Assembly: GCA_002269645.1 (NCBI GenBank)
Contig: NIVC01000352.1
Location: 62,001 to 126,000 of the forward strand
Length of the DNA stretch: 64,000 bases
Origin: Macrostomum lignano
Lineage: Eukaryota
Reading direction: 5' to 3'
Under the pieces are notes generated by a model, which made no database searches, was not told where the DNA came from, and saw nothing but the letters and a program-made list of their open reading frames with translations. A program made the position numbers and the translations under genes. Below are positions 9,252-62,450 of this stretch, in pieces (position 1 is the stretch's first letter; each line of letters starts with the position of its first letter).

Positions 9252-10452
9252 GATAGATATACCATAGGTTTATATAAATAGGCTAATTGCTTAACATTGG
9301 GCATTTAAATTTAAAATGGCCATAGGTTTTCTAAGGATCATAATCTAATGTGTCTCTAGAAAAGTTTTTAATAGTTGCTAAATTAAAATCTAACTCTATA
9401 TTTTACTAAGCTTCAAACTCCTTTTTGATTAAGGCCTTATGCTTTGAACCAAATCCATATAGCAGATGTAGTTATCCTACTATAGTTAAGGAGCCATAAC
9501 TTCTAAAAAGTTGGTAATATTTTCAAAATTCTTTCACTTGTGTCATTTGTAAATAAAGCAACTATGATACAAATTTGTTGCTGTTACTCTAGCTGTCTAT
9601 TAAAAAGAAACATGAATAAGTCCTAAGACTTTTGGATACCCCTTATAGTGCTGAAAAGTGCTTATTATTTGGCTTTCCCTTGGTTTTAATTTTTTTGTCT
9701 AGACAGTTTTTTCTTCTAAGAAATTTTATATTGTCTGCTCAATTTTTAGACTTAATTTTTTATGTTTCTATTTTACTCTGATATAATACAAATAAATATA
9801 GGTACAAAAAAGAGAAATTTCAACTTAAATGCTACTATATAGTCTATAGTAGCCATGGAAACTAAAGCACAGCATATGTCAGTGGCCTAAATTAGATTAG
9901 GCCACTGACATATGATTTGGGGCTAAATTAGAATCTCAGCTTGGCTCTAAGTCTGCTCATGCAATTAACAGCCTTGAGGGCCAATCCATAAGGCATATTG
10001 AAGTGTACATGCCTAATGATAAATAAAGTTAGGGCTACTGTACACTCCTGTGTGAGTGTGTGCCACTGTGCCTGTGCATATGACTGTACATATCTATGCA
10101 CATGTGTGCTTGCTCAGGGGAGTTGGTGGAATGGGCAGTAATGCCTTTTGCCGGTTGTGTGCCTATGTCGCCTTAAAGTGCGCCAGGGTGCACACAGCCC
10201 CCTGTCTGTAATAAAAATGTAAATAAAAGCTTCAGAACTGAAAATTAACTAGAAGTTATTAGCTTGTAGATTAGATTATTAGGATAACTAATCTATTCTA
10301 TCTAGAACTCTCCCTTTTTGCTACCAGGAGGTTAAGCTGGATGAAATGGTGATTACTTGTCAAATAAATTTACGGCTCTGTAATAGAGCTCACAGTGATG
10401 CTCTGGGCCAGTTTCCAGTTGACACTTTCTAATTTACTTTCATTCGCGCCAG

Positions 10453-11655
10453 TCATCCGCCATCTGTCGAGTAGCCTGCGCCCTGTCTGGCGGCGTTGAC
10501 AGTGCCGTTTCGGCCTACCTGCTCAGGCAGCGCGGCTTTCAAGTCACCTGCGTACACATGACCAACTGGGACGAACTGGACGAGACTGGCCACTGCTCCG
10601 GCGAGCGGGACCTTCGCGATGCCCAGCTAGTCAGTAAGCAGCTCGGCCTGCCATTCCTGCGTCTGAACTTCACCAAGGAGTATTGGACTCGGGTGTTTCA
10701 GCACACCCTGGGCGAGTACGAGTCCGGCCGAACTCCCAATCCGGATGTGCTGTGCAATAGGCACATTAAATTCGACTGCTTGTACAAGTATTGCATTGAC
10801 GAATTGAAATTCGATGCTCTGGCTACTGGCCACTATGCTAGGACGTCGTTTGGCGATTTTCTTGAGCACCGCCAACCGGGCGAGAGTGTCCGCCTGCTGT
10901 GCTCAGCCGATCCGGTTAAGGATCAGACATTCTGGCTGTGCCAGGTGCCGCAGGAGGCTCTGCGCCGGGCTGCTTTCCCTATTGGCAGCCTGATGAAGCC
11001 GGATGTCAAACGCCTGTGCTCAAACATCGGCCTGTCTAGCATAGCAACCAGACGGGAGAGCGCCGGAATTTGTTTTATTGGCAAGCGAAATTTTTCCGAT
11101 TTTATTGACCAGTACGTTGAACGTCGGCCAGGCAGATTTGTACACCTGGAGACTGGCAAAGAGCTCGGTCAGCACGATGGCGTACATCATTACACTCTTG
11201 GCCAGCGGCCGCGCTTAGCTATTGATCATCGGCGCTACTTTGTTGCCAAGCTGTGCCCGAACAGTCGGACAGTTTATCTAGTTGACGGCGTCAGCCACCC
11301 GTCTCTGTACCACAGAGATATGCGCTGTGAGCCGGCGCACTGGATTCACTCGGAGCCGCCTGAACTGGCCGCCACTGACCAGCTGCACTGCCAGCTCAGA
11401 TGGCAGAACAAATGGCGCCCGATCGACTGCCATCTGGCTAAAGATGGCGCCGGCTTGCGGGTCACCCTGGCCGAGCCGATGCGCTGCGTGTCGGCCGGTC
11501 AATACGCCGTGTTCTATCGCGACAATGAGTGCTTGGGTAGCGCTAGGATATTGGCCTCGCGTAGCCTGTGTGACGAGGGCAGTCGAGATCCGGTGCATTG
11601 GAACACGGACGATTTTCTAGTGCGATATCCAGATTCTGTTGCCCTATCTGCTTGA
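10453..11655 (+). CDS. TRMU: Mitochondrial tRNA 2-thiouridylase MnmA/TRMU; single coding exon with no in-frame initiator ATG before the PP-loop
   Basis: Frame extends upstream of ORF 10558 to SSAICRVACALSGGVDSAVSAYLL; catalytic NPDVLCNRHIKF, ATGHYAR, KDQTFWL, ESAGICFIG; acceptor cgccAG at 10451-10452; in-frame stop at 10420-10422. Confidence 0.95.
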   Translation, partial: SSAICRVACALSGGVDSAVSAYLLRQRGFQVTCVHMTNWDELDETGHCSGERDLRDAQLVSKQLGLPFLRLNFTKEYWTRVFQHTLGEYESGRTPNPDVLCNRHIKFDCLYKYCIDELKFDALATGHYARTSFGDFLEHRQPGESVRLLCSADPVKDQTFWLCQVPQEALRRAAFPIGSLMKPDVKRLCSNIGLSSIATRRESAGICFIGKRNFSDFIDQYVERRPGRFVHLETGKELGQHDGVHHYTLGQRPRLAIDHRRYFVAKLCPNSRTVYLVDGVSHPSLYHRDMRCEPAHWIHSEPPELAATDQLHCQLRWQNKWRPIDCHLAKDGAGLRVTLAEPMRCVSAGQYAVFYRDNECLGSARILASRSLCDEGSRDPVHWNTDDFLVRYPDSVALSA

Positions 11656-11934
11656 TGAGTCGCTTTAAATACTTTTTAATGATAGCTTGATTTTATGCAT
11701 TTAAATATAAACTTGAGAACTTATTTGACTTGTATCTGGAATCGTGATTGATACTTTTATCCGTTGGTGCTGTTTTTTAAACTGATTTTTTAGTTTATTA
11801 TCACGGATTTCAAATTATCTTTATCTGGGCAACTCTGATTCATCCAGTTCTGTCTGATCCAACTTTTCAAGTCTTTAAGTCCAGCTCTATTTAGCTAGAT
11901 TTTTATAGTTACCTAGTATTTCTACTCGTATCTT

Positions 11935-12460
11935 CATGTCTAATTCCACTATCCTTGCCAGGACATGTCCAATTCCCCTATCCTTTCGAGGGCATGTCTA
12001 ATTCCCCTGCCCTAGCCAGGACATTTCTAATTCCCTTATCCTAGCCATGACATGTCTAATTCCCTTATCCTTTCCAGAGCATGTCTAATTCCCTTATCCT
12101 TTCCAGAGCATGTCTAATTCCCCAGTCCTAGCCAGGACTGTCTAATTCCACTATCCTTGCCAGGACATGTCCAATTCCCCTATCCTTTCGAGGGCATGTC
12201 TAATTCCCCTGCCCTAGCCAGGACATTTCTAATTCCCTTATCCTAGCCAGGACATTTCTAATTCCCTTATCCTAGCCATGACATGTCTAATTCCCTTATC
12301 CTTTCCAGAGCATGTCTAATTCCCTTATCCTTTCCAGACCATGTCTAATTCCCCAGTCCTAGCCAGGACTGTCTAATTCCCCTATCCTAGCCAGGACATG
12401 TCTAATTCCCTTATCCTTTCCAGAGCATGTCTAATTCCCCAGTCCTAGCCAGGACATATC
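11935..12460. repeat. 29-bp minisatellite (CATGTCTAATTCCCYTATCCT...) with about 202-bp higher-order repeat
   Basis: Tandem units; variant block at 11951 recurs at 12153. Confidence 0.92.
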
Positions 12461-12885
12461 CAGACGTTATCCTCTCCTTTCATTCATCCTTAATCATTCT
12501 ATTCCTTCAATCTGCTCTTTTATTATTCTTGTGAAGCGCTGTTGTCAATTTGCTTTGTTGTTTTAAAGCTCTCGCCGGCGTCTCTTCCGCTATTCCGGCG
12601 CTGAGGCTCGCATATCAAGGGTCTAATTTCCCTACCTCATGCCCCGCACCTGCTGCCTCTTAGCTTACCCTCCCTATGTTCGGGCCTTCGATTTGCTGTT
12701 TTCCCCGAGATCAGTTCTCGTGTCTTTCCTTTTCCTCTTTAACCTACAGCCTTCTACTTCTAGTGAAATCTAAGATGTTCACGTGATGCAAGTAATTAAC
12801 TTAATAATTATACTGCACTAATTTTTGTTCTTATCTCTAGTGTTTATTTAGAGCTATCTAGAGCTATTTAAACACATTTTTACAG

Positions 12886-13341
12886 GCAACTTCAAAACCG
12901 GCGCCATCAGTCTCAGCTAGCGGCACCGGCATCAGCGTGTCGGAGCCGTCTCGCGACTACAAGATTAGCCTGCATTACGCTGTAGACAAGCTGTGCGACT
13001 CCGTAGCCACCCAGCAGCAGTGCAAATTCTCTCCAGAAGTTGTAGCGGCCATAGCCGAGTCTGTGCACCGCCTTGCGCAGACCTATTCCTTAGATTTAGA
13101 ATCCTTTGCTAGGCACGCCAAGCGGAGCACAGTTGGCATTGACGATGTCAGACTGTGCGCTAGGCGTAATCCTCAGCTATTGCGCCACTTGCTGACGCTT
13201 GGAGGCGGCGGCGGCGGCGGTCGACGCAAGAAAAGCCGAGATAACGGCGGCGGGGATTCAGCGGGAGGGACAGGACCGATGGTGCTTGACGAGGGCACGG
13301 CCGATTCTGCAGTTTCCGCTGCAGAGGCTGCCAGCTGTTAG
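12886..13341 (+). CDS. CENPS: Centromere protein S / MHF1 histone-fold protein; no in-frame ATG before the histone fold
   Basis: KISLHYAVDKLC...FSPEVVAAIAE...DLESFARHAKRSTVGIDDVRLCARRN is typical CENP-S; acceptor atttttacAG at 12884-12885, frame open from 12886; in-frame TAG at 12859-12861. Confidence 0.93.
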   Translation, partial: ATSKPAPSVSASGTGISVSEPSRDYKISLHYAVDKLCDSVATQQQCKFSPEVVAAIAESVHRLAQTYSLDLESFARHAKRSTVGIDDVRLCARRNPQLLRHLLTLGGGGGGGRRKKSRDNGGGDSAGGTGPMVLDEGTADSAVSAAEAASC

Positions 13342-13574: not shown

Positions 13575-13994
13575 CCCTCTAGTAACTACTAGATAGGCCA
13601 CTCAGCACATTTGCGTGCAACTACTTTCAGTTCAGTAGCTAGTTAAACAGAAGCATTTTAATGTATTTTTTAAACCCCTACAGCTTAAACCCTCCAACCG
13701 CGCCTTTCCACACTACCCCCTCGCCCCGCCCCAATTTTTATTGCCTTTCTCGGAATTCCAGCCTAAAGCTGCCATGTACATTTCAGTAGACTGGCTAATG
13801 TACATTATTGCTGAACCAATTAGCAAGTTATTTACGCCTGCAAGCTTGAGCTTCTAAACTTATCAAGGTCGTTTCAGCTGGCTTTATTTTATAAAATAGC
13901 TTATGTATTCTTCTTTGCTACTGAACTGAAAGTAGAAAGCTGATTTACTAAGTATTTATGCCTGAGTGGCCCATTTAGGTTATTTTAGTATGTG
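13575..13994 (+). mobile_element. MITE family A copy 1 (about 430 bp, TIR CACAGATACTAGAATAACTAGATGGGCCACTCAG)
   Basis: tagataggccactcag at 13590 and ctgagtggcccatttag at 13962; body shared with copies at 14.0, 34.5, 37.3 and 38.7 kb. Confidence 0.85.
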
Positions 13995-14004
13995 ACTATG
14001 CCCA

Positions 14005-14448
14005 ACCTATTATTTAACGGGTCAACTTAGGCATATATTATTAGAAAAACAGATTTCTACTTCCAGTTCAGTAGCAAGGAAAAAAACAAGCTATTTTATA
14101 AAAACCAACTTTATCAAGCAGCTGAAATGACTTTGCTAAGTTTAGAAGCCAAAGCTTGCAGACGTAAACAACTTGCTTATTGGTTCAGTCATAAAGTACA
14201 TTGGCCAACGCCACTAAAAGTAAAACGTACAGGGAATATTTTACCAAAAAGGGCAATAAAATTGGGCGGGTGTAGAGGTTTGGTGTGGAAAGACGCGGTT
14301 AAGGATTTATAAGCTAAGGTAAGAACTAACAAATGAGCCTTGTCCATAAAAGTACATTAAAAATGCTTCTGATTGACTTACTACTGAACTGGAAGTAGTT
14401 TACACGCAAATGTGCTGAGTAGCCCATCTAGTTATTCTACTATCTGTG
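14005..14448 (-). mobile_element. MITE family A copy 2, inverted and directly adjacent to copy 1
   Basis: Reverse complement of the copy 1 body; ends gctgagtagcccatctagttattctactatctgtg. Confidence 0.82.
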
Positions 14449-14908: not shown

Positions 14909-17900
14909 ATGTCGGATTTCGATAAAGCCGCCGCTGCAGCAATGCAGCAAACTTCTTCGTCTTCTTTCGGCGTTGGCGACGATATCGCTGTTGGCGACGG
15001 AGCGTCCGCGTCCGCGGCGGCCCCCACCCCGCCAGTTGAGCAGTACACGGCTGAGGAGAGGCAGATGGCCCAGCGCGCCGCTGAGCACTTTCAGCAGGGG
15101 AATCTGGAGGACTGCTTGCAGCTGGTTTGTTCGATAAACTATTTTAATAAATTTGGGGGGCATTTTGGAGGTTCAGGTGACAGCTGTGACCCACTGAAAG
15201 ATCAGGTGATAGCTGTGACCCATTGAAAGATCAGGTGATAGCTGTGACCCACTGAAAGATCAGGTGATAGCTGTGACCCACTGAGAGATCAGGTGACAGC
15301 TGTGACCCACTGAAAGATCAGGTGATAGCTGTGACCCATTGAAAGATCAGGTGATAGCTGTGACCCACTGAAAGATCAGGTGATAGCTGTGACCCATTGA
15401 AAGATCAGGTGATAGCTGTGACCCACTGAAAGATCAGGTGATAGCTGTGACCCATTGAAAGATCAGGTGATAGCTGTGACCCACTGAGAGATCAGGTGAT
15501 AGCTGTGACCCATTGAAAGATCAGGTGATAGCTGTGACCCACTGAGAGATCAGGTGATAGCTGTGACCCATTGAAAGATCAGGTGATAGCTGTGACCCAT
15601 TGAAAGATCAGGTGATAGCTGTGACCCACTGAGAGATCAGGTGATAGCTGTGACCCATTGAAAGATCAGGTGATAGCTGTGACCCATTGAAAGATCAGGT
15701 GATAGCTGTAAATTAATGTGACTGCACTTGGAATCGAGCCTGGGTCGCTGGCACACCAGAGCAGCTGCATTACCGCTGGGCTACGGCCCCCCTGAGATCA
15801 GGTGCTAGCTGTAACGCACTGATAGATCAGGTGCTAGCTGTGACCCACTGAGAGATTAGGTGCTAGCTGTGACCCACTGAGAGATAAGGTGCTAGCTGTG
15901 ACCCACTGAGAGATTAGGTGCTAGCTGTGACCCACTGAGAGATTAGGTTCTAGCTGTGACCCACTGAGAGATTAGGTGCTAGCTGTGACCCACTGAGAGA
16001 TTAGGTGCTAGCTGTGACCCACTGAGAGATTAGGTTCTAGCTGTGACCCACTGAGAGATTAGGTTCTAGCTGTGACCCACTGAGAGATCAGGTGCTAGCT
16101 GTGACCCACTGAGAGATAAGGTGATAGCTGTGACCCACTGAAATTAGGTGCCAGCTGTGACCCATTGTACGATCAGGTGACAGCTGTGACCCACTGAGAG
16201 ATCAGGTGACAGCTGTGACCCAGTGCAATGAAAGCCACAGTCAGCTAATCAGAGACCAACCAAACCTGAACAGGTGAAGCAGCTGTGCAGCGCCCATCCA
16301 GCAGACTGGGCTGCCCAGCAGAACCGCGCCGTTGCCGATTACGTGCGCTCGGCTTATTTTCGAACCGAAGAATTCCGTCAAACGCTGTTTAACGTGGCAT
16401 CGACGGCCAAATTTTCAATCGATGCTTGCGACCAGATTGAAGAGCCAGACAGTGCCGTACTGTTCTATAATCTGGCCCTGTTGAACTTCTACCAGCGGCA
16501 GCATCTGGAAGCCAGGCGGATTCTAAAGGTAGTTGTTTTGTTTCACATTAGAATTCTGCCTTCCTTAAATTCTGAATTATTAAAGAGACTAGCCTAACAA
16601 ACTAGAAATTTGTCCCATGACTTAATTCAAAAATTACGCTGAAGCCAGTCAGAAGAATCGCCCCCAAACCACCCGGAAGAATCGCCCCAAACCACCCGGA
16701 AGAATCGCCCCCAAAACGCCTGGAAGAATCGCCCCCCAAAACGTTTGTAAGAATCGTCCCAAACCACCCGGAAGAATCGCCCCCAAACCACCCGGGAGAA
16801 TCGCCCCAAACCACCCGGAAGAATTGCCCCCAAACCACCCGGGAGAATCGCCCGAAACCACCCGGAAGAATCGCCCCCAAAACACCTGTAAGAATCGCCC
16901 AAACCACCCGAGAGAATCGCCCCAAACCACCCGGAAGAATCGCCTCCAAAACGCCTGGAAGAATCGCCCCCAAAACGTTTGTAAGAATCGCCCCAAACCA
17001 CCCGGTAGAATCGCCCCCAAACCACCCGGAAGAATCGCCCCCAAAACGCCGGGAAGAATCGCCCCAAGCCACCCGGAAGAATCGCCCCAAACCACCCGGA
17101 AGAATCGCCCCAAACCACCAAGAAGAATCGCCACCAAAACGCCTGTAAGAATCGCCCCAAACCACCCGGAAGAATCGCCCCCAAACCACCCGGAAGAATC
17201 GCCCCAAACCACCCGGGAGAATCGCCCCCAAAACGCCGAGAAGAATCGCCCCAAACCACCCGGAAGAATCGGCCCCAAAACGTTTGTAAGAATTGCCCCA
17301 AACCACCCGGTAAAATCGCCCCAAACCACCCGGGAGAATCGCCCCAAACCACCTGGAAGAATCGCCCCCAAAACGCCGGGAAGAATCGCCCCAAACCATC
17401 CGGAAGAATAGCCCCAAACCACCCGGACGAATCGCCCCAAACCACCTGGACGAATTGCCCTAAACCACCCTGAAGAATCGTCCCAAACCACCCTGAAGAA
17501 TCGCCCCAAACCACCCGGAAGAATCGCCCCAAACCACCTGGACGAATCGCCCCAAACCACCCGGACGAATCGCCCCAAACCACCCGGAAGAATCGCCCCA
17601 AACCACCTGGACGAATCGCCCCAAACCACCAGGAAGAATCGCCCCAAACCACCCGGACGAATCGCCCCAAACCACCCGGAAGAATCGCCCCAAACCACCC
17701 GGAAGAATCGCCCCAAACCACCAGGAAGAATCGCCCCAAACCAACCGGAAGAATCGCCCCAAACCACCCGGAAGAATCGCCCCAAACCACCCGAAAGAAT
17801 CGCCCCAAACCACCCGGAAGAATCGCCCCAAACCACCTGGACGAATCGCCCCAAACCACCCTGAAGAATCGCCCCAAACCACCCGGAAGAATCGCCCCAA

Positions 17901-20900
17901 ACCACCTGGACGAATCGCCCCAAACCACCAGGAAGAATCGCCCCAAACCACCCGGACGAATCGCCCCAAACCACCCGGAAGAATCGCCCCAAACCACCCG
18001 GAAGAATCGCCCCAAACCACCAGGAAGAATCGCCCCAAACCACCCGGAAGAATCGCCCCAAACCACCCGGAAGAATCGCCCCAAACCACCCGGAAGAATC
18101 GCCCCAAACCACCCGGAAGAATCGCCCCAAACCACCCGGAAGAATCGCCCCAAACCACCCGGAAGAATCGCCCCCAAACCACCAGGAAGAATCGCCCAAA
18201 ACCACCCGGGAGAATCGCCCCCAAACCACCAGGAAGAATCGCCCCAAACCACCCGGAAGAATCGCCCCAAACCACCCGGAAGAATCGCCCCCAAAACGTT
18301 TGTAAGAATCGCCCCAAACCACCCGGACGAATGGCCGCCAGAGACCGCTCCCTAGACAGCCCATTTCCTTCATCCACCCAAACTTCATTGGCTCACTCCC
18401 AGGCGATGCTGCCGCTGTCCGAACTGCTGGAGCCGGCCTTCTACAGGGCGCTAGTCATGCTGCTACTTGACACTTTTCTGAAGCTCCAATGCCCGGAGGA
18501 TGCCATCCAGCTCCTAGCGGACGGCGAGAAAGTCGTCAGCCAGGCCGACGAAACCGATTCCGCTCTGTCGGCGTCCGCCGTTGAATCCGACGGTGGAGAC
18601 CCCGGCAGAGGCAGAGGGGCAGGCGGTTTGGAGAGAGCCAAGTCGGACCTGTGTCTGATCCGCATAGCCGCCCTGCTAATGCGCCGGGATCTGGGCTCCG
18701 CTAAGCAGCTAATTAAAGCTAATCGGCAACATCCGTCAGCTGATTTCACTCGTACTCTTCAGTTCCACCGGGCCCATTTAGCCTATCTAGCTGGAAATTT
18801 GCGCAAAGCGTTGCGCCTGATGCACGACATACCTGGGACGCCGCGTAGTCCAACAGACACGGGCGAATGCGAGGCGGTAATGCAGTGGAACAATTTAGCC
18901 TGCGTTCACTTTCACCTTGGCAAGCACAATCTGGGCGCTTTCTATCTGAAACGGGCTATTAAAGAGAATGAGAAAGCCTGCTCAGATTACCAAGCTAAGA
19001 AAGCTAATGGCAAGGGTAGCCACGTGTTGCACCATCAGATACCGCTGCGAGCCTATTCTATTAGCAGGCACTACGAACTGTTGCACAATCTGGGTTTGGA
19101 GCTGCTATTCAGGTGAGCATTTGCCTGTGTGTGCCTGTGCTCAGGGGTAAAAAAAATGAGGTGTGACTGTTTCCTTCCTGGCTTCTGCGGGTTGATTTAA
19201 CTATTCATTATTCCTAATAATTAAAGTTGTACTATACTAATTAAAACCAAGGAATTTGTGTCTCTAAAGTACGATATTAGTCTCCCATAATCAGGAGATT
19301 AGTGTCCCTGAGGTATGAGATTAGTCTCCCATAATCAGGAGATTAGTGTCTAAGGTATGAGATTAGTCTCCCATAATCAGTGGGTTAGTGTCCTTGAGGT
19401 ATGGGAGTAGTGTCTTATAATCAGGAGATTAGTGTCTCTGAGGTATGAGATTAGTCTCCCATAATCAAGAAATTAGTGTCTAAGGTATGAGATTAGTCTC
19501 CCATAATCAAGAAATTAGTGTCTAAGGTATGAGATTAGTCTCTTATAATCAGGAGATTAGTGTCTCGTCTGATGTATAAGGTTAGCCTCCCATACTCGGG
19601 GGGGGGGGTTATTGAAAGGCCCTATAAAGTACAGAGAAACCTACAATTTTTTCGAACCTACAGCGGCAAGCCGGTGCAAGCGTTTGACTACCTGCTCGAA
19701 GTAATTAACGTCTATCCGCGCAATCCCCGCCTGTGGCTCCGCCTAGCCGAGTGCTCCATCAAGTATCAGCGGCTTAGCAACAGCGCCGATCGCGAATTTC
19801 GCATCCGCCAACGAGCCGTCAAAGGCGTTGTCGGTTCCGGCCGGCACCGCAAGCTGCTGCTTGGCACCGGGGTGCAGGAAATAAAAAAGCCGTGGGAAGA
19901 GTCCGCGGCCATGCCCACTCCTACATTGGAATTCGCTTCCCTGTGCGTTAGAAATGCTTTGCTATTGCTGCCGCAGGAGCCGCCGTTTCCGCATGGCGAT
20001 ACCGACTATCACGGTCACGTGTTGCGCTGGGCCGAGACCCTCTGCTTGCCGCTTAGTCCGGCCGGATTCCTTCGCGGAGTTCAATTGATCCAATTCCGCG
20101 CCTCCGTGCTCACCTCGGCGGCTTATATCGCCCTGTGCCTGTGCGATCATCTGCAGGCCCTGCGCTACTGCAACCAGCTGCTGAGTCAGCCTGCACTGTC
20201 TGACTGTCAACTCTATCTGGGCAAAATGTACTTGGCCGAGGCTAAAGTCAACTTGCAGGTGAGTGTCATTCATTGGCTTGGGAGTTTAAAGGTGGAAGAT
20301 GGAGACGCTAATAAATTAGCTCTCAGCGTGAGATTTCTCCGCATCTCACGTGAGATTCCTCCGCATCTCAGCGTGAAATTCCTCCGCATCTCAGCCTCGG
20401 ACTCCTCTGCATCTCAGTGTGAGATTCCTCCTCATCTCAGCGGGAGATTCTTCCGCATCTCAACGTGAGATTCCTCCGCATCTCAGCGTGAAATTCCTCC
20501 GCATCTCAGCCTCGGATTCCTCTGCATCTCAGTGTGAGATTCCTCCTCATCTCAGCGTGAGATTCTTCCGCATCTCAACGTGAGATTCCTCCGCATCTCA
20601 GCGTGAAATTCCTCCGCATCTCAGCCTCGGATTCCTCTGCATCTCAGTGTGAGATTCCTCCTCATCTCAGCGTGAGATTCCTCCTCATCTCAGCGTGAGA
20701 TTCTTCCGCATCTCAACGTGAGATTCTTCCGCATCTCAGCGTGAGATTCCTCCTCAGCTCAGCGTGAGATTCCTCCGCATCTCAGCGTGGGATTCCCCCA
20801 TCTTACTCGTGAGATTTCTGCACATTTCAGCTTGAGATTCCTCCAACTTACTCATGAGATTTCTCCGCATCCCAGCGTGAGATTCCTCTATCTTACTCAT

Positions 20901-21538
20901 GAGATTTCTCTATCTTACTCACAAGATTTTCCCGCATCCCTGTGGGAGTTTTTCGAATCTTCCAAAGGGATTTCTCCCGTCTCATCTTACTGTAAGACAG
21001 CTTAAATTCGTACCACCAAACCGCCCAGGTGCCGGAGCACATCTCCAAGGACTATCTAAACGACGCTGTTCAGCTATTGAACCCGGCCTCTGTCACTCGA
21101 GTCGACGTTCTGCCCGCACAGCCGCCTCGCCCGGACGACTGGCCGAAGCGCAAAGAGTCTCCGGCGCCGTCCGTCAGCCAATGGACGCCCGACAACGTGC
21201 TGGAGGCGCAGAACATTATGAAGTACAACTTGTCCGTTGTTTACGCTATCAAAGGCGACTTCGATTTGGCTAGGCAGCACCTGCAGGATGTTGTGTACAA
21301 TCCCAAAGGCCAGGGCATGTCGCCGCCATTCCCGGCCCATTTCTACTTTTTTAAGCTCTACTTGGACCTGATGCAGGGCAGGCGCAGTTTTGCCCAACTG
21401 CTATTAAAAGAAACCTTCGGTCATCTGACGCCTAATCCGCCTAATTGGCGCTCTAAGCCGGCCGCCGCCGCCCCCGCTGTGGCGCCGCCGGATGCCTCCG
21501 CTGTGCAGCCGCCACAGGGAGCTCTGCCGCAGCAATAA
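14909..21538 (+). CDS. CNOT10: CCR4-NOT complex subunit 10 (TPR), 5 exons, about 761 aa
   Basis: Exons 14909-15124, 16274-16528, 18403-19112, 19664-20258, 21029-21538 with GT/AG and consistent phases (0,0,2,0); motifs NRAVADY, WNNLACVHFHLGKHNLGAFYL, YELLHNLGLELL, NPRLWLRLAECSI, VVGSGRHRKLLL, GKMYLAEA. Confidence 0.92.
15172..16222. repeat. 29-bp minisatellite (GACCCACTGAAAGATCAGGTGATAGCTGT) filling CNOT10 intron 1
   Basis: Tandem units; interrupted at about 15715-15792. Confidence 0.95.
15718..15792 (-). mobile_element. tRNA-derived SINE head or tRNA pseudogene inserted in the minisatellite
   Basis: Minus strand GGGGCCGTAGCCCAGCGGTAATG...CAGGCTCGATTCCAAG with A-box (TAGCCCAGCGG) and B-box-like (GGCTCGATTCC) motifs. 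Confidence 0.6.
16655..18328. repeat. 23-24-bp minisatellite (GAATCGCCCCAAACCACCCGGAA), about 70 copies, CNOT10 intron 2
   Basis: Tandem units; explains the long repetitive minus-strand ORFs 16602-18388. Confidence 0.97.
19275..19565. repeat. About 42-44-bp composite minisatellite (GATTAGTCTCCCATAATCAGGA/GATTAGTGTCTAAGGTATGA), CNOT10 intron 3
   Basis: Tandem units built from two related half-units. Confidence 0.9.
20323..20900. repeat. 23-bp minisatellite (CAGCGTGAGATTCCTCCGCATCT) with 115-bp 5-mer higher-order repeat, CNOT10 intron 4
   Basis: Variant cagcgtgaaa recurs at 20369, 20484 and 20599 (period 115 = 5 x 23). Confidence 0.93.
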
Positions 21539-23822: not shown

Positions 23823-23906
23823 CTAAGCTATACTTTTTTGCCTTCTCGTAGAAGTAAGATTTTCCTATGTTTCCTTTTCTGTCAATCCAAATTCAAACTG
23901 GAGCAG

Positions 23907-26900
23907 CTACCAAAAAAGAAGCGACGCTTGGATAGCGCCAGTTCGAGTGCCGAACCAGAGCAGCAGCCAAAAAAGAAGCAGCACTTGGATAGCGCCAATT
24001 CGAGCGCCGAACCAGAGCAGCAGCCAAAAAAGAAGCAGCGCTTGGATAGCGCCAATTCGAGCGCCGAACCAGAGCAGCAGCCAAAAAAGAAGCAGCACTT
24101 GGATAGCGCCAATTCGAGCGCCGAACCAGAGCAGCAGCCACAAAAAAAGCAGCAGCACTTGGATAGCGCCAATTCGAGCGCCGAACCAGAGCAGCAGCCA
24201 AAAAAGAAGCAGCGCTTGGATAGCGCTGGCTCTAGCGCCGAGCCATCTTCGTCAACTTCGACATCGCCAACCCGACCGCTGATGGAATTCAGCTACGCGT
24301 CGGCTTCAGTTGAAGAGTTTCGTTTTGCCGACAAGCGAGTCCGTTTGTTGACTAAAAAAGTGAAAGATTTGCTGCCCGATGGCCGGTGCGTCATCTATTG
24401 GATGTCGCGAGATCAGCGCGTTCAAGGTAAATTGAATTGAAGCATTCTGTGCCACGTGATACAGTGTTATTATCAGTACACAGGAACATTTGCCAGCGAT
24501 GGTGGGGGAGCATATACAATGCGCAGATAAAAATAAGCCTGAATTAAGACTGAATTAAGACTACTGAATTAAACAGTAGCTTATTAGCGTTTTAAGTGAT
24601 TTATAGCCAAATCCAAAATGCTAATAATCAATAATCAAAGCCTATTTCAAAAACAAGTAGTGTTTTTATCAACAGTGCATTGGAGATCTTTAGGATTTAT
24701 TCAAGCATTCTTTTCCTTCAAGCTGCCGGAGCACTCTCTCATCTCCCCCATCTCCCCTCCCCTCCTCTCCCCTCTTCCCCTCCCCTCTCCCCTTATCTCA
24801 CTTCTCTCTCATCTCCCTCTCTCCTCTCTCCCCTTCTCTCCTCTTCTCTCTTGATTGCCTCTCTTCTCTCCTCTCTGTCTCCCGCAGTCATGCGCTTGAT
24901 TCTATATCCGGCCCTTAAATTACATAGGTTTGCCGACCGCGCCGGCTGGAGGGGCTTTTGAGATATTTTCTCAGGCTTTGTTTTAACCCATGGAGTTCTA
25001 TTAATAGCATCTAAAGATAGATATTATGTTCTTATAGAGGTTGAAACATATCCGCTTATCCCCGCAGACAACTGGGCTCTAATCCACGCCCAACGACTGG
25101 CCCTGCGCTCACGACTGCCTTTGTGCGTCGCTTTCAACTTGGTGCCGAAGTTTCTCGACGCCACAATTCGCCAATTCGACTTCCTGCTGCGCGGCCTTGA
25201 ACACGTCGAGACCGAATGCCGACGGCTGGACATCGACTTCCGCCTGCTAACCGGCCAGCCAGTCGATAATCTGCCTCGAATGGTTCGCGACCTGTCAGCT
25301 GCCGCTCTGGTCGCTGATTTCAGCCCGCTGCGCGTGCCGCTCAACTGGGCGAATTCTGTAGCCGCTAAACTGCCGGCCGGGGTGCCCATGTACCAGGTGG
25401 ATGCGCACAATATTGTGCCAGTCTGGCTGGCCTCGGACAAGCTCGAATACGCGGCTAGAACTATACGGCCGAAGATTCATCGCTACCTGGGCGAATATCT
25501 GACCGAATTCCCGCGCATCGAACGGCATCCGTATCGGCTGCCGGAGGCCGACCGGGCCAAGCCGGTTAATTGGAAAGCTGCCAGAGACAGTCTGGAGGTT
25601 GGTGCTCAATATTCAGCATCATCAGCCCGATTACACTTTCATCTACCATTCTAATAATATATCTACCAACTTGTCTACCAATAAAAGTCTGATAGATTGG
25701 CCAGAAATGTGCCGATGCTGGGCTACTGTGTTGGGCAGTTAACAAAAGCGTTACGGCAGTGTAAAAACGGAGCAGTTATGCTGCTTTTATACTGATCCTA
25801 TATATCCATTTGTCCATTGGCTTGTGGCGATTGCCTACTCACCTACCTACCTACCTACCTACCTACCTACCTACCTACCTACCTACCTACCTACTTACTT
25901 ATCTACCTACCTACCTACCACCTACCCACCTACTCTACCTCTCCCTATTCTACTTACTTACCTACCTACTCATACCCCTCTACCTATTGTACATACCTAC
26001 CTTCCTGTCATCAATATTTTCTATTCAGATGCCAATTGGCTCCGTGATAATCCAGAAAACCCATTATATGAGATATGCATTTGGGAGTAGGGCGGCATTT
26101 ACTCGTGCGGCGCAAACGTATAGTTTTTGTCATCACTGTACATTAACAAATTTGTTGACAGCGAGGAACTAAGCAGTCATGCCCAATCACACAAGATGAA
26201 TGTGGCCGCGCATGGAATCGAACGCAAGATATTTGGGTTACGCTAAGCTGCTCTGCTCCACCTCTCTATCCTCATGCCCAGGTGAACATGTCGGTGCTGC
26301 CAGTGAAGTGGGCCGAGCCTGGCCCGGTCGGGGCCAGCCGGACCCTTGCGGAATTTCTGCAGAGTCGGCTGCGCCGGTTTGCCACCGGCCGCAACGATCC
26401 AAATGTGGCCGCGCTTAGCAACCTGTCGCCATGGCTGCACTTTGGCCAAATCAGCGCCCAGCGTTGCGCTTTCGAAGCTAAGAAAGTGAGTCGGATTGTA
26501 AAGATCCGTCATCTGTTCTTTGAGTTCCGTCACCTGTTCTTAGAGATCCTTCACCTGTTCTTTGAGATCCGTCACCTGTTCTTTGAGATCCGTCACCTGT
26601 TCTTTGAGATCCGTCACCTGTTCTTTGAGATCCGTCACCTGTTCTTTGAGATCCGTCACCTGTTCTTTGAGATCCGTCACCTGTTCTTTGAGATCCGTCA
26701 TCTGTTCTTAGAGATGTGTCACCTGTTCTTTGAGATCTGTCACCTGTTCTTTGAGATCCGTCACCTGTTCTTTGAGATGTGTCACCTGTTCTTTGAGATC
26801 CGTCACCTGTTCTTTGAGATCTGTCACCTGTTCTTTGAGATCTGTCACCTGTTTTTAGAGATCTGTCACCTGTTCTTTGAGATCCGTCACCTGTTCTTTG

Positions 26901-44834: not shown

Positions 44835-45965
44835 TCAGAACTTGATTGACACGTCTTTCTGGCGTTGCGTTTCTGCCGACTCCACTGCAGCCGGTAGTCC
44901 GTGGTTCGAGCCCCCCTCCCGTTCGGAAGCCTCGCCGTCGAGCAGGCCGGTCCTGGCCAGCTCCAGGGCGGAGCAGCGGGGAAAGCCGGGCACCGTCACC
45001 GTGTCGTGGAAGCCCTCGTAGTCGATGACGCATTCGCCTGTGTCCGTTGGCAAGATGCTGAGGTCCTCGAAGCGGTGTCCCCAGCGGATCTCCGTTGGCA
45101 GGTAGCTGGTCCGGGCCTCCGTGGTGGCGCCCGTCGAGATCACGACGCCGTTCATGAAGACCAGCAGCTCAAAGTCGGCCGCGTAGAGGTCCTTGGCGGA
45201 CATGTTCCAAAATGGCGAGCCGCTGTCGATTCTGTGCTGGACAACTACCGGCCAGCCGAGGAAGAGGCGGGCATCGCCGCCGTCCAGGCCCATGTTGATG
45301 ACCTGCTGCTCCAGTAAGAGCGTCTCGCCTTCAGCGGTGAGTCGCCGCTTCACCAGGACGCCGCGCACGCTGCAGTCGATGAGGTGAGAATGGCGAGCGT
45401 CGCCAACGCGGCAGAGCAGCACGAGATGCCCGTCGCGGCTGCAGATTGCCGCATTTTTGCTGAACAGCAGCGTGCCTGTCCGGTTCTTCGACTTCGTCAG
45501 CTTGGCCAGCACCGCGCCAGTCATCAGCGTCGTGATGATGAGGTTGCTGTAGGACTGCAGCGTCACCAGCAGCACCGCAATCGGGCACTTGTCCGACGGC
45601 GACCGCGACCCGTAGCCGATGGTGATCTGCGTCTCCATGGAGAACAGCAGCGTGGCCAGGAAGGAGTTCACGTTGAGTAGGCAGGGCTCGAACCCCAGCG
45701 GCGGGGTGGTCAGGTAGTCTCCATGGCCGTAGCTGAGCGCCCACCAGAAGAAGGTGAAGAGCAGCCAGCAGCTGAAGAAGGCGGAGAAGAACACGGCTAG
45801 GCAGTAGCGCCACTTCATGTCCACCAGGGTGGTGAAGATGTCGCCAAAGTAGCGGCGCTTCCGCTTCCGCACGTTGCTATGGACGACGTTGCACTTGCCG
45901 TTCTTCATCACCAGCCTGTCGTAGCCTCGCATGCGCATGATGGCGAACTGCGACTCGCGGCGCAT
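44835..45965 (-). CDS. Inward-rectifier potassium channel (Kir), single exon
   Basis: RLVMKNGKCNV, DIFTTLVDMKWR, FSMETQITIGYGSR pore, conserved extracellular Cys pair, ARTSYLPTEIRWGHRF. Confidence 0.95.
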   Translation of the reverse strand: MRRESQFAIMRMRGYDRLVMKNGKCNVVHSNVRKRKRRYFGDIFTTLVDMKWRYCLAVFFSAFFSCWLLFTFFWWALSYGHGDYLTTPPLGFEPCLLNVNSFLATLLFSMETQITIGYGSRSPSDKCPIAVLLVTLQSYSNLIITTLMTGAVLAKLTKSKNRTGTLLFSKNAAICSRDGHLVLLCRVGDARHSHLIDCSVRGVLVKRRLTAEGETLLLEQQVINMGLDGGDARLFLGWPVVVQHRIDSGSPFWNMSAKDLYAADFELLVFMNGVVISTGATTEARTSYLPTEIRWGHRFEDLSILPTDTGECVIDYEGFHDTVTVPGFPRCSALELARTGLLDGEASEREGGSNHGLPAAVESAETQRQKDVSIKF

Positions 45966-46680
45966 GATGGCGGACTGGCCAAGACTGCCAATTGATTGAT
46001 GGATGCTGAATTGAGGGGTCCGAGGACAGGTCGCTTGGAGGCTGGGGCTCGCATTATTGTCACCATTAAGTAACCGAGGGAGCGGAAAAACCAGTTTTTC
46101 TAAGGAACGAACTGGCTTGAAGCGGTTGGCTGATAGTTACTGTGTTCCTTTCTCTTTCTCTCTCTCTCTCTCTCATTGAGCTGCTTTAGTTTGAGTAGTT
46201 TCCATTAGTAGCGACATTCAATGTCAGTTCCATCGAAGCGGCGATTAGTTAGATATTTTATACGGTGCCCCCACGTAAAGCTGGCCTCGAATTGAACAGA
46301 TCGAGTTGAAACTCTATTGTATAATATGTTGCTTAGATTTATAAAAAAAGATATTTGATAAATGCAATACATTTCGGCTTAAAAATTGCATGCCAAAAAG
46401 CAACTATTATAAAAAACTGTTCAAAAGTTACTTAAAAGATTGAAGACAAGCAGTTAACAAATGCGCGAGATGCTACTATACCCCAGCAGTAACGTGTAAC
46501 AAATGGGTAATGAGGAAAGCACGACGGGAGCTCCTCGCTAAGAAAGCTAAAAATAGCAATAAGAATGCAGCCAATAACAGCTGGGCTCAGGAGAATCCGC
46601 GCTAACCAAACTGTGCAATAAAAAAGAGCAACCAGAGAATATCAACTGATCATGGATAAGACAGCTTAGAGAGATTAGCG

Positions 46681-59804: not shown

Positions 59805-60800
59805 CAATCAGGTATATTTAGGTATATCAGGTATATTAGGTAGCTGCAAGGGGCGTCCAGTGGATGTAGCGAGGAGGCAGAGGGAACCGCCCATTTCGCT
59901 AGTCCCTGGCAACCAATGACTTCCATTGAAGTGATGTCACCCAGGGGGACCCGTCGCTCTTGCTTGCAGCGCGGTCCTCCCCACTGGCGGTAGGGAAGAA
60001 GTCAGCTCATCCCATGTCCCTAAGGTACAGGGTGAGTAGTGGGATGCTCTCGGGCCTGCAAATGTCGGAGAGAACTTGGTTTGGCCCAAGGTGAGTGAGC
60101 CTGGCCTTGGTGAAAACCGGGCAGTGGCAGATAAAATGCTTGGCGTTTTCACTGCCTGAGCAGCAGAAGGGGCACTGCTCCTCAGGTACTTGGCCCTGAA
60201 GGAAATGGTGGCAAGAGAAGCAGCCATGCCCAGAAAGGGCCTGCTAACTGCTCTAAGGTCTCTGTGGTTGAGCCTGAGGAGGGCTCTACTCAGGAGAGGA
60301 GAGGGGCAAAGGATGGCCGCATGGGATTGCCTACAATTCTGAGTGTCGTGCCACCTGCGGAGATGCTCGGAGTCAGTCCAGCACTTAATGCAGGAGTTGA
60401 TCACCAAAGCGGGGATGGGGGCTCCCGGGCCTGGCCATAGCAGCACGCCGGCGAAGCCAGCCTTGGCCAGCAGGTCAACGCGCTCGTTGCCAAGGAAGCC
60501 GGCGTGGCCCGGGATCCATCTGAGCTTCACCTGGTTGCCTAGCGCAAGCCTGTTGAGTTGGGTGTTGCAGTCCAGGATGGACCTGGAGCTGGCAGTGCTG
60601 CGGCAAAGGGCCCGAAGGGCTGCTTGGCTGTCAGAGTGAAAAATAAATTTCCAACTGCTAAGCTGCCTTTGGCGCAACTCTGCCGCGTAGGAGCTGATGG
60701 CAAGCACCTCGCTCTGAAAAACACTGGAGTTGAGCCCAGTGTGCTAGGAGTAGCTCCACCCAACTTCTCCCTTGAAGAAGATGCAAGCTCCGAAGCCTGA
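59805..60800 (-). mobile_element. 5'-truncated non-LTR retrotransposon (RNase H-bearing, I/Loa/Tad-like): RNase H, CCHC knuckle, 3' UTR and short-repeat tail
   Basis: QSEVLAI, IFHSDSQAAL, VKLRWIPGHAGFLGNERVDLLAK; shifted-frame CPFCCSGSENAKHFICHCP; tail (tacctaa/tacctga)n at about 59805-59845; frameshifted. Confidence 0.85.
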
Positions 60801-61976: not shown

Positions 61977-62450
61977 ATGAGCATCCTGTGCCCATGCGCA
62001 GCCTCCAGCAGTGGTGCCTCATCTGGCGCCGAGGCCAAGTACTCGGTCGGCCGGGGCAACAAGCTGTCAGCCGAGCAGGTCAGTCGTCAAATCGATCGAC
62101 AGTTGAAAGCCGACCGGGAGCTTCGACGCCACGAACGCCGCATCCTGTTGCTAGGCACTGCAGCTAGCGGTAAAAGTACATTTCTGAGATCGATGCGTAT
62201 TATACACGAGGATCGATTCTCTGAGCAGGAGCTGCTCAGTTTCAAGTCAGTTATCTATTGCAATATTTGGCGCGGCCTGATGAAATTGCTGTACGTTAAA
62301 AAACGGCTTGGCATTCGCTGGGAGAATAATAAAACTGGCGTACCGGCTGTTAAAGCGCTGCTGGCTCTGGAGAAGGAAATTGGCCACTCGGCGCTCATGG
62401 CCTGCGGCCTGCGCGAGGATCAGTTCCTCAGGGCAGCGCCTTTTATTCAG
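61977..62450 (+). CDS. Heterotrimeric G-protein alpha subunit, G12/13-like, first coding exon (gene continues beyond window)
   Basis: SRQIDRQL, RILLLGTAASGKSTFLRSMRIIH, IYCNIWRGL; N-terminal Cys5/Cys7, no Gly2; phase-0 donor CAG/GTATTT at 62450. Confidence 0.9.

What the first reader, a model, noticed from the sequence alone, without database searches (positions are those of the whole stretch)
10420..13341. Adjacent TRMU and CENP-S lack start codons and begin at phase-0 acceptors: candidate spliced-leader-donated AUG in a polycistronic cluster
Seen: TRMU coding starts right after cgccAG (10452) as SSAICRVACALSGGVDS, with an in-frame stop upstream and the first ATG only after the PP-loop. CENP-S starts after tttttacAG (12885) in frame, with an upstream in-frame stop and no ATG before the histone fold. 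Adding one Met gives MSSAICRVACALSGG, comparable in length to human MQALRHVVCALSGG. Known: flatworm spliced leaders end in AUG, which can serve as the initiator, and SL trans-splicing resolves operons. Inference: both proteins depend on trans-splicing for initiation; all recognised genes from 1 to 34 kb are co-oriented, consistent with an operon-like unit.
Basis: partly seen in the sequence, partly recalled or inferred. Interest (0 to 1): 0.75.

Follow-up and report, generated by a model that had tools for sequence, protein, structure and literature searches.

The report
Flatworm genes borrowing spliced-leader start codon
Two neighbouring genes of the flatworm Macrostomum lignano (a tRNA-modifying enzyme and a centromere protein) have no start codon of their own and almost certainly get it from the AUG at the end of the spliced leader RNA; this mechanism is already known in flatworms, so the main value is correcting the public annotation.

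Summary
The window is Macrostomum lignano scaffold NIVC01000352.1, and window position 1 is record position 62001.

- **TRMU:** it is a single exon at 10453-11655 that starts directly after an AG (10451-52). An in-frame stop lies 10 codons upstream, and the first ATG (10558) comes after the PP-loop.
- **CENP-S:** it is a single exon at 12886-13341 that starts after TTTACAG. An in-frame stop lies 8 codons upstream, and the only Met comes after the histone fold.
- **Spliced leader:** the published 35-nt M. lignano leader ends in ATG. Joined at either acceptor it reads in frame (MSSAICRVACALSGG; MATSKPAPS).
- **Orthologue check:** in 119 TRMU orthologues the Met sits a median of 11 residues before SGGVDS. 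The donated Met would sit 12 before it.
- **Public annotation:** both genes are labelled 'partial'. At a paralogous locus they are g1 and g2 of one transcriptional unit. In this window they are fused through an intron (11620-12885) that ends at the CENP-S acceptor, so they are co-transcribed.

I could reach no RNA reads, so trans-splicing at these exact bases is inferred. A two-gene operon is supported; a 34-kb operon is not. The mechanism is known (Cheng et al. 2006), so this is a new member of a known kind. Interest is low to moderate.

The parts
10420..10422 (+). In-frame TGA that closes the TRMU frame 10 codons upstream of the exon start
10423..10452 (+). 3' end of the TRMU outron. It is pyrimidine-rich, has a CTAAT branch-point-like motif about 20 nt upstream, and ends in acceptor cgcCAG (AG at 10451-52). 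This is the only AG between the upstream stop and the conserved domain.
   Evidence: Read from the sequence. The segment is 100% identical in paralogous locus L002. The branch point is inferred, not tested.
10453..11655 (+). TRMU (mitochondrial tRNA 2-thiouridylase) single coding exon: 400 codons without a start codon, plus the TGA stop
   Evidence: Pfam tRNA_Me_trans E=1.3e-71, with the match starting at exon residue 6 = profile position 2. 51% identity to animal TRMU.
10486..10503 (+). PP-loop SGGVDS (ATP-binding signature). It lies upstream of the first in-frame ATG.
10558..10560 (+). First in-frame ATG of TRMU (Met36 of the exon). A protein started here would lack the PP-loop.
11620..12885 (+). 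Intron of the GenBank fusion model PAA84975.1. A phase-0 donor CTA|GTGCGA inside the TRMU 3' coding end is joined to the CENP-S acceptor, giving DDFL|ATSK.
   Evidence: P0001 sequence compared with the window. The same junction is present in UniRef A0A1I8JAJ1.
11656..12885 (+). Spacer between the two genes, 1230 nt. It contains an AATATAAA poly(A)-signal-like motif at 11704-11711.
   Evidence: No ATGGT occurs anywhere in the spacer.
11935..12457 (.). Tandem repeat of a 29-nt unit, 18 copies, inside the spacer. Subtracting it leaves 707 nt.
   Evidence: The copy number differs in L002.
12859..12861 (+). In-frame TAG that closes the CENP-S frame 8 codons upstream of the exon start
12880..12885 (+). 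CENP-S acceptor TTACAG (TTTCAG in L002). It fits the published M. lignano trans-splice acceptor motif [T/C]TNCAG.
   Evidence: motif from PMC8629364
12886..13341 (+). CENP-S (MHF1) single coding exon: 151 codons without a start codon, plus the TAG stop
   Evidence: Pfam CENP-S E=2.2e-23, residues 26-98

Best explanation
TRMU and CENP-S form a two-gene, spliced-leader-resolved transcriptional unit of Macrostomum lignano.

One pre-mRNA covers both genes. The 35-nt spliced leader, which ends in AUG, is trans-spliced to the AG at 10452 and to the AG at 12885. Both acceptors sit exactly at a codon boundary, so the leader's terminal AUG becomes codon 1 of each protein (MSSAICRVACALSGG... and MATSKPAPS...). 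Each mRNA then has the same 32-nt 5' UTR.

Without trans-splicing, neither ORF has a usable start codon.

A minor route joins a donor inside the end of TRMU (11620) in cis to the CENP-S acceptor. This gives the in-frame TRMU-CENP-S chimera that GenBank annotates.

Shown: the sequence anatomy, the organism, the frame, the orthologue N-termini and the public gene models. Inferred: that the leader is actually joined at these two bases, and that translation starts at its AUG.
For: 1. Organism. The window is identical to M. lignano NIVC01000352.1.
2. Leader. The M. lignano SL is CGGTCTCTTACTGCGAAGACTCAATTTATTGCATG. About 30% of genes are trans-spliced and about 15% lie in operons (PMC8629364). Wiberg et al. 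describe its final ATG as a translation start codon (PMC10468722).
3. Anatomy. Both exons start in phase 0 directly after an AG, with an in-frame stop 8-10 codons upstream and no ATG before the essential domain.
4. TRMU N-terminus. In 119 TRMU orthologues the Met lies a median of 11 residues before SGGVDS. The SL Met would lie 12 before it, matching residue for residue sequences such as Lingula MSSLIRRVACGM, against [M]SSAICRVACAL here. The Pfam domain starts at exon residue 6.
5. Public models. Three transcript-derived TRMU-containing models and one CENP-S model from two annotation efforts all lack a Met and an upstream exon. One starts exactly at the acceptor, with SSAICR.
6. One transcriptional unit. 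At paralogous locus L002 the genes are Mlig005592.g1 and .g2. Genes are cut out of transcriptional units at trans-splice and poly(A) signals (PMC5730564; PMC5816591).
7. Co-transcription. The annotated intron 11620-12885 joins the two genes, which requires one pre-mRNA and shows that 12885 is a real acceptor.
8. Spacing and motif. The CENP-S acceptor fits [T/C]TNCAG. The repeat-adjusted spacer is 707 nt, below the published 1-kb operon threshold.
9. Precedent. Use of the SL AUG as initiator is established in flatworms (Cheng et al. 2006, as cited in PMC9851317 and PMC12582326).
Against: - I saw no SL-containing read or cDNA. No M. lignano RNA assemblies were reachable.
- The TRMU acceptor (CGCCAG) matches only the CAG part of the trans-splice motif.
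- The GenBank 5'-partial CDS starts lie 12-24 nt downstream of the acceptors, not at them. These models therefore give no base-precise support.
- The raw spacer (1230 nt) is far from the ~100-nt mode reported for M. lignano operons.
- The AUG context in the leader (U at -3) is poor by vertebrate rules.
- The 550 nt upstream of TRMU are 100% identical in both copies, so conservation says nothing.
- A cis-spliced isoform uses the CENP-S acceptor.
Confidence: 0.75

Rival explanations
1. A small cis-spliced 5' exon ending in ATG supplies the start codon of TRMU. The best candidate is ...GGATGAAATG|GTGATT at 10341-10349, which would leave a 103-nt intron ending at 10452.
For: One ATG|GT with a partly consensus donor (GTGAT, against the published GT[G/A]AG) lies 103 nt upstream of the acceptor, and it is present in both copies.
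Against: - One ATGGT in about 600 nt is roughly what chance gives. Only two occur in the 2 kb upstream.
- An out-of-frame ATG 5 nt upstream (ATGAAATG) would be met first and opens a 9-codon overlapping uORF.
- None of the three transcript-based TRMU models has such an exon, and one starts exactly at the acceptor.
- No ATGGT exists at all in the spacer, so this route cannot serve CENP-S.
Confidence: 0.08
2. CENP-S is not made as a separate protein. It is translated only as the C-terminal part of the in-frame TRMU-CENP-S fusion that GenBank (PAA84975.1) and UniRef (A0A1I8JAJ1) annotate.
For: The fusion intron 11620-12885 is annotated independently in two assemblies and keeps the reading frame.
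Against: - The paralogous locus annotates CENP-S as its own gene, g2, cut from the same transcriptional unit.
- Among the 120 best TRMU homologues listed, only this M. lignano model carries a CENP-S domain.
- TRMU and CENP-S are not neighbours in Hymenolepis or Opisthorchis.
- Chimeric models are a known artefact affecting about 21% of predicted flatworm operons (PMC12582326).
- Fusing a mitochondrial enzyme to a nuclear histone-fold protein is biologically implausible (inference).
Confidence: 0.1
3. The two ORFs are translated from a non-AUG codon or an internal Met, or they are decaying pseudogenes.
For: Neither ORF has an ATG at its start. All four differences between the two TRMU copies are non-synonymous.
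Against: - Both ORFs are intact over 400 and 151 codons in two copies, with full-length domain matches.
- Four substitutions give no statistical power.
- The internal Mets lie after the PP-loop and after the histone fold, so the products would lack those essential parts.
- Only 8-10 codons lie between the upstream stop and each exon start. By eye I saw no strong near-cognate start codon among them; this was not scored.
Confidence: 0.03

Closest known systems
Schistosoma mansoni mRNAs that need the spliced-leader AUG as initiator (Cheng, Cohen, Ndegwa and Davis, J Biol Chem 2006; cited in PMC9851317 and PMC12582326)
   Same: The flatworm SL ends in AUG. The recipient exon starts in phase 0 with no AUG of its own, so the leader supplies codon 1.
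   Different: This is a different, free-living and early-branching flatworm. Here both genes of one transcriptional unit depend on the leader AUG. There is no experimental proof at this locus.
Macrostomum lignano SL trans-splicing and operons (Wudarski et al. 2017, PMC5730564; Ustyantsev and Berezikov 2021, PMC8629364)
   Same: Same organism, same SL and same acceptor motif. It is a two-gene unit, the commonest operon size (75%), and the spacer is inflated by a tandem repeat, as those authors describe.
   Different: Those papers do not discuss the SL AUG as an initiator. Their annotation leaves such genes as 'partial'.
Chimeric gene models over flatworm operons, and shared cis/trans acceptors (Calvelo et al. 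2025, PMC12582326)
   Same: An operon is annotated as one fused gene, and the acceptor of the downstream gene is also used in cis.
   Different: Here the fusion is an actual in-frame splice from a donor inside the upstream coding sequence, not simply retained pre-mRNA. The species was not in that survey.
slORFs: ORFs created by SL addition (slORFfinder, PMC9851317)
   Same: The start codon is supplied by the leader.
   Different: slORFs in nematodes, ascidians and euglenozoans mostly use non-AUG NUG codons and create new or alternative ORFs. Here a canonical AUG completes two ancient, conserved ORFs.

Membership tests
SL-AUG-initiated flatworm mRNA (Cheng et al. 2006 type) | The organism has a spliced leader whose exon ends in AUG | tested here: met
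   The window is M. lignano. The published SL ends ...TTGCATG (PMC8629364; PMC10468722). No SL gene lies in the window itself.
SL-AUG-initiated flatworm mRNA (Cheng et al. 2006 type) | The SL AUG is in frame with the ORF, with no stop in between | tested here: met
   Both exons start in phase 0, at 10453 and 12886.
SL-AUG-initiated flatworm mRNA (Cheng et al. 2006 type) | The exon has no AUG of its own that could give the full-length functional protein | tested here: met
   The first ATG comes after the PP-loop in TRMU and after the histone fold in CENP-S. In-frame stops lie 8-10 codons upstream.
SL-AUG-initiated flatworm mRNA (Cheng et al. 2006 type) | The leader is physically joined to the mRNA at that acceptor | not testable with these tools
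   No RNA reads or cDNA were reachable. Support is indirect only.
SL-AUG-initiated flatworm mRNA (Cheng et al. 2006 type) | Translation starts at the SL AUG | not testable with these tools
   This needs ribosome profiling or N-terminal proteomics.
SL-resolved operon of M. lignano (Ustyantsev and Berezikov criteria) | Adjacent genes on the same strand with a repeat-adjusted spacer under 1 kb | tested here: met
   The raw spacer is 1230 nt. Subtracting the 523-nt tandem repeat leaves 707 nt.
SL-resolved operon of M. lignano (Ustyantsev and Berezikov criteria) | Both genes lie on one primary transcript | tested here: met
   This rests on public annotation only. The genes share a transcriptional-unit name, Mlig005592.g1/.g2, and an annotated intron joins them.
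SL-resolved operon of M. lignano (Ustyantsev and Berezikov criteria) | The downstream gene is SL trans-spliced | not testable with these tools
TRMU/MnmA tRNA 2-thiouridylase (PF03054 + PF20259 + PF20258) | Three-domain architecture with the PP-loop SGGxDS | tested here: met
   E-values are 1.3e-71, 8.3e-16 and 2.6e-15. SGGVDS occupies exon residues 12-17.
CENP-S/MHF1 histone-fold protein (PF15630) | Full-length CENP-S histone-fold domain | tested here: met
   E=2.2e-23, with profile positions 4-76 of 76 matched.

The most novel reading that the evidence does not exclude
Phase-0 acceptors that evolved to take the leader's AUG also make operon genes fusible. Any phase-0 donor in the upstream gene gives an in-frame chimera, and the annotated TRMU-CENP-S fusion would then be a real protein rather than splicing noise. 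Under this reading, both genes' complete dependence on the SL AUG also acts as a switch, in which trans-splicing licenses translation while precursor and unspliced RNAs stay silent.
Probability: 0.12. Interest if true: 0.5.

Novelty: new member of a known kind. Interest (0 to 1): 0.3.

Why it matters
The practical gain is in annotation. The GenBank model PAA84975.1 in this window is a chimera of two unrelated genes. Its counterparts at the paralogous locus (PAA84479.1 and PAA84478.1) are flagged 'partial' only because the leader's AUG was not counted. If this is general, part of the 'partial' M. lignano proteome may in fact be complete. Adding the SL AUG at mapped trans-splice sites would repair those models. 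Biologically, the locus extends SL-AUG initiation from parasitic flatworms to an early-branching, free-living and transgenesis-ready model, where it can be tested directly.

Tried and rejected
- **RNA evidence.** I looked up exact SL-Met products and ran homologue searches. Nothing from M. lignano turned up beyond the GenBank and UniRef models. A further exact look-up of ten variants was prepared but not run, because the cluster contents already excluded them.
- **Conservation between paralogous loci.** The 550 nt upstream of TRMU are 100% identical, so this is uninformative. A third copy (L003) ends 400 nt before the TRMU acceptor.
- **Synteny in parasitic flatworms.** TRMU is not next to CENP-S in Hymenolepis or Opisthorchis, so operon conservation cannot be used.
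- **Per-gene records in papers.** I found no mention of Mlig031338, Mlig005592 or Mlig032881 in the text or held supplements.
- **Naming the transcriptional units of the neighbours.** The third protein search did not return the M. lignano CNOT10. Rebuilding the IU-hydrolase CDS by enumerating introns gave 3757 solutions, so I abandoned it. An exact look-up of the IRK product failed.
- **SL RNA gene or other known RNAs in the window.** None were found.
- **dN/dS between the two copies.** There are only four differences, so there is no power.
Full report
**Source.** The TRMU reading frame finds a 98%-identical GenBank protein from Macrostomum lignano. The contig that encodes it is base-for-base identical to the window. 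The window is therefore scaffold NIVC01000352.1 of assembly Mlig_3_7, and window position p equals record position 62000 + p. The sequence is AT-rich and full of tandem repeats, with GC-rich exons.

**Observation.**
- TRMU is one exon. An in-frame TGA sits at 10420-22. The only AG between that stop and the conserved RVACALSGG block is at 10451-52. The exon starts at 10453 (SSAICRVACALSGGVDS) and ends with TGA at 11653-55.
- The first in-frame ATG of TRMU is at 10558, which lies after the PP-loop (10486-10503).
- CENP-S is also one exon. An in-frame TAG sits at 12859-61, the acceptor tttttacAG ends at 12885, the exon starts at 12886 (ATSKPAPS), and TAG is at 13339-41.
- The only Met in CENP-S lies after the histone fold.
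- Pfam confirms both identities. The TRMU domain begins at exon residue 6 (profile position 2), and CENP-S covers residues 26-98.
- GC content jumps at both acceptors.

**Why the start codon must come from outside the exon.** Both ORFs are intact in two genomic copies and match their families over the full length. Only 8-10 codons separate each exon start from the nearest upstream in-frame stop, and none of them is ATG. For TRMU the orthologues settle where the Met belongs. In 119 homologues that start with Met, the Met lies a median of 11 residues before SGGVDS. A Met placed immediately before the exon would lie 12 residues before it. That reproduces N-termini such as Lingula MSSLIRRVACGM, Paragonimus MPSLIRSVACAI and a shark MSRALRHVVCAL, against [M]SSAICRVACAL here. 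The missing codon therefore lies exactly at the splice junction.

**What supplies it.** M. lignano has one described spliced leader, CGGTCTCTTACTGCGAAGACTCAATTTATTGCATG. It is present on about 30% of genes, and about 15% of genes lie in operons. The enriched trans-splice acceptor motif is [T/C]TNCAG (PMC8629364). Joined to 10453, the leader reads ATG TCA TCC GCC. Joined to 12886, it reads ATG GCA ACT TCA. Both are in frame. The CENP-S acceptor (TTACAG here, TTTCAG in the paralogue) fits the motif. The TRMU acceptor (CGCCAG) fits only its CAG core. That the flatworm SL AUG can act as the initiator is established: in Schistosoma mansoni more than 40 cDNAs need it (Cheng et al. 2006, as summarised in PMC9851317, and PMC12582326). 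Wiberg et al. call the final ATG of the Macrostomum SL a translation start codon (PMC10468722).

**What the public annotation adds.** The Mlig_3_7 models come from RNA-seq. Transcriptional units are cut into genes at mapped trans-splice and poly(A) signals (PMC5730564; PMC5816591).
- In this window the model is PAA84975.1 (Mlig031338.g3, 'partial'). It is a TRMU-CENP-S fusion. Its CDS starts at 10471, has an intron at 11620-12885, and ends at 13341.
- At the paralogous locus (NIVC01000372.1, L002) the genes are separate: Mlig005592.g1 (TRMU, partial) and Mlig005592.g2 (CENP-S, partial). Two unrelated genes share a prefix only if they were cut from the same transcriptional unit.
- A third model, from the older assembly (UniRef A0A1I8JAJ1), is again the fusion and starts exactly at the acceptor with SSAICR.
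- No model has a Met or an upstream exon.
- The fusion intron shows that 12885 is a real acceptor and that both genes sit on one pre-mRNA.

One caveat applies. The GenBank CDS starts lie 12, 18 and 24 nt downstream of the acceptors and are not preceded by AG. They look like truncated 5' ends and give no base-precise support.

**Operon.** The spacer is 1230 nt. It contains an AATATAAA motif about 50 nt after the TRMU stop and a 523-nt array of a 29-nt repeat. Subtracting the repeat leaves 707 nt, which is below the 1-kb repeat-adjusted threshold used for M. lignano operons. Two-gene operons are the commonest class there. The pair is not conserved in Hymenolepis or Opisthorchis.

The larger claim is not supported. 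The recognisable genes from 1 to 34 kb are indeed all on the + strand. However, the EF-hand gene upstream belongs to a differently named unit (Mlig032881.g2) and lies 7.8 kb away. It and CNOT10 each have their own ATG. I could not establish the unit of CNOT10 or of the genes beyond it.

**Rivals.**
- *A cis exon ending in ATG.* The only candidate near TRMU is ATGAAATG|GTGATT at 10341-49. It is preceded by an out-of-frame ATG, is no more than chance would give, and is absent from all models. The spacer has no ATGGT at all.
- *Fusion as the only route to CENP-S.* This is contradicted by the separate g2 model, by the absence of such fusions among the 120 listed TRMU homologues, and by the known frequency of chimeric operon models in flatworms.
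- *Non-AUG initiation, internal initiation or pseudogenes.* This is unlikely given intact, full-length, duplicated ORFs.

**Verdict.** The finding is real, and its core interpretation is very probably right (0.75). It is one more instance of a mechanism described in 2006, in a species already known to have an AUG-ended leader and operons. What is new is local. Two named conserved genes, both members of one operon, depend on the leader's AUG. The GenBank models are wrong in an instructive way, being labelled 'partial' and chimeric. Direct proof needs SL-junction reads, which the tools here could not reach.

Noticed in passing
window 11620-12885 (intron of GenBank model PAA84975.1): The public annotation fuses TRMU and CENP-S in frame. 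A donor inside the last 36 nt of the TRMU coding sequence is joined to the CENP-S acceptor. The same junction is annotated independently in the older assembly.
   Followed up: yes
window 10471; L002 10001 and 12501: The GenBank 5'-partial CDS starts lie 18, 12 and 24 nt downstream of the acceptors and are not preceded by AG. The cause is unexplained; it may be an artefact of how the pipeline calls transcript 5' ends.
   Followed up: partly
window 13580-14448; copies at about 34.5-34.9, 37.3-37.75 and 38.75-39.17 kb: A foldback or terminal-inverted-repeat element of about 860 bp sits between CENP-S and CNOT10 and is repeated at least three more times in the window. Removing it would shorten that spacer from 1.57 kb to about 0.7 kb.
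   Followed up: partly
window 11935-12457: A 29-nt tandem repeat with 18 copies lies in the spacer. Its copy number differs between the two paralogous loci.
   Followed up: yes
L003 5462-5478: The IU-nucleoside hydrolase paralogue has an acceptor-like cTTACAG 6 nt before its own ATG. An SL AUG joined there would also be in frame (M-P-S-M-K-L-I-I-D).
   Followed up: no
window 23823-24437: The first exon of a class II photolyase gene carries a long in-frame N-terminal extension without an ATG. The extension is built from a 57-nt repeat ([19 protein letters not shown], 5.7 copies). The first in-frame ATG is at 24283, so the true start is unclear.
   Followed up: no
window 15173-16222, 16652-18336, 20321-20888: Within the CNOT10 gene span (14909-21538), probably in its introns (the exon structure was not resolved), lie large tandem arrays of 23-29-nt units. 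These arrays create long spurious ORFs on both strands.
   Followed up: no
window 44838-46136 (- strand) and 59940-60743 (- strand): An inward-rectifier K+ channel gene lies in one 433-codon ORF (Pfam IRK and IRK_C). Further on there is an ORF that looks like RNase H or reverse transcriptase; that reading is by eye only and was not checked.
   Followed up: partly
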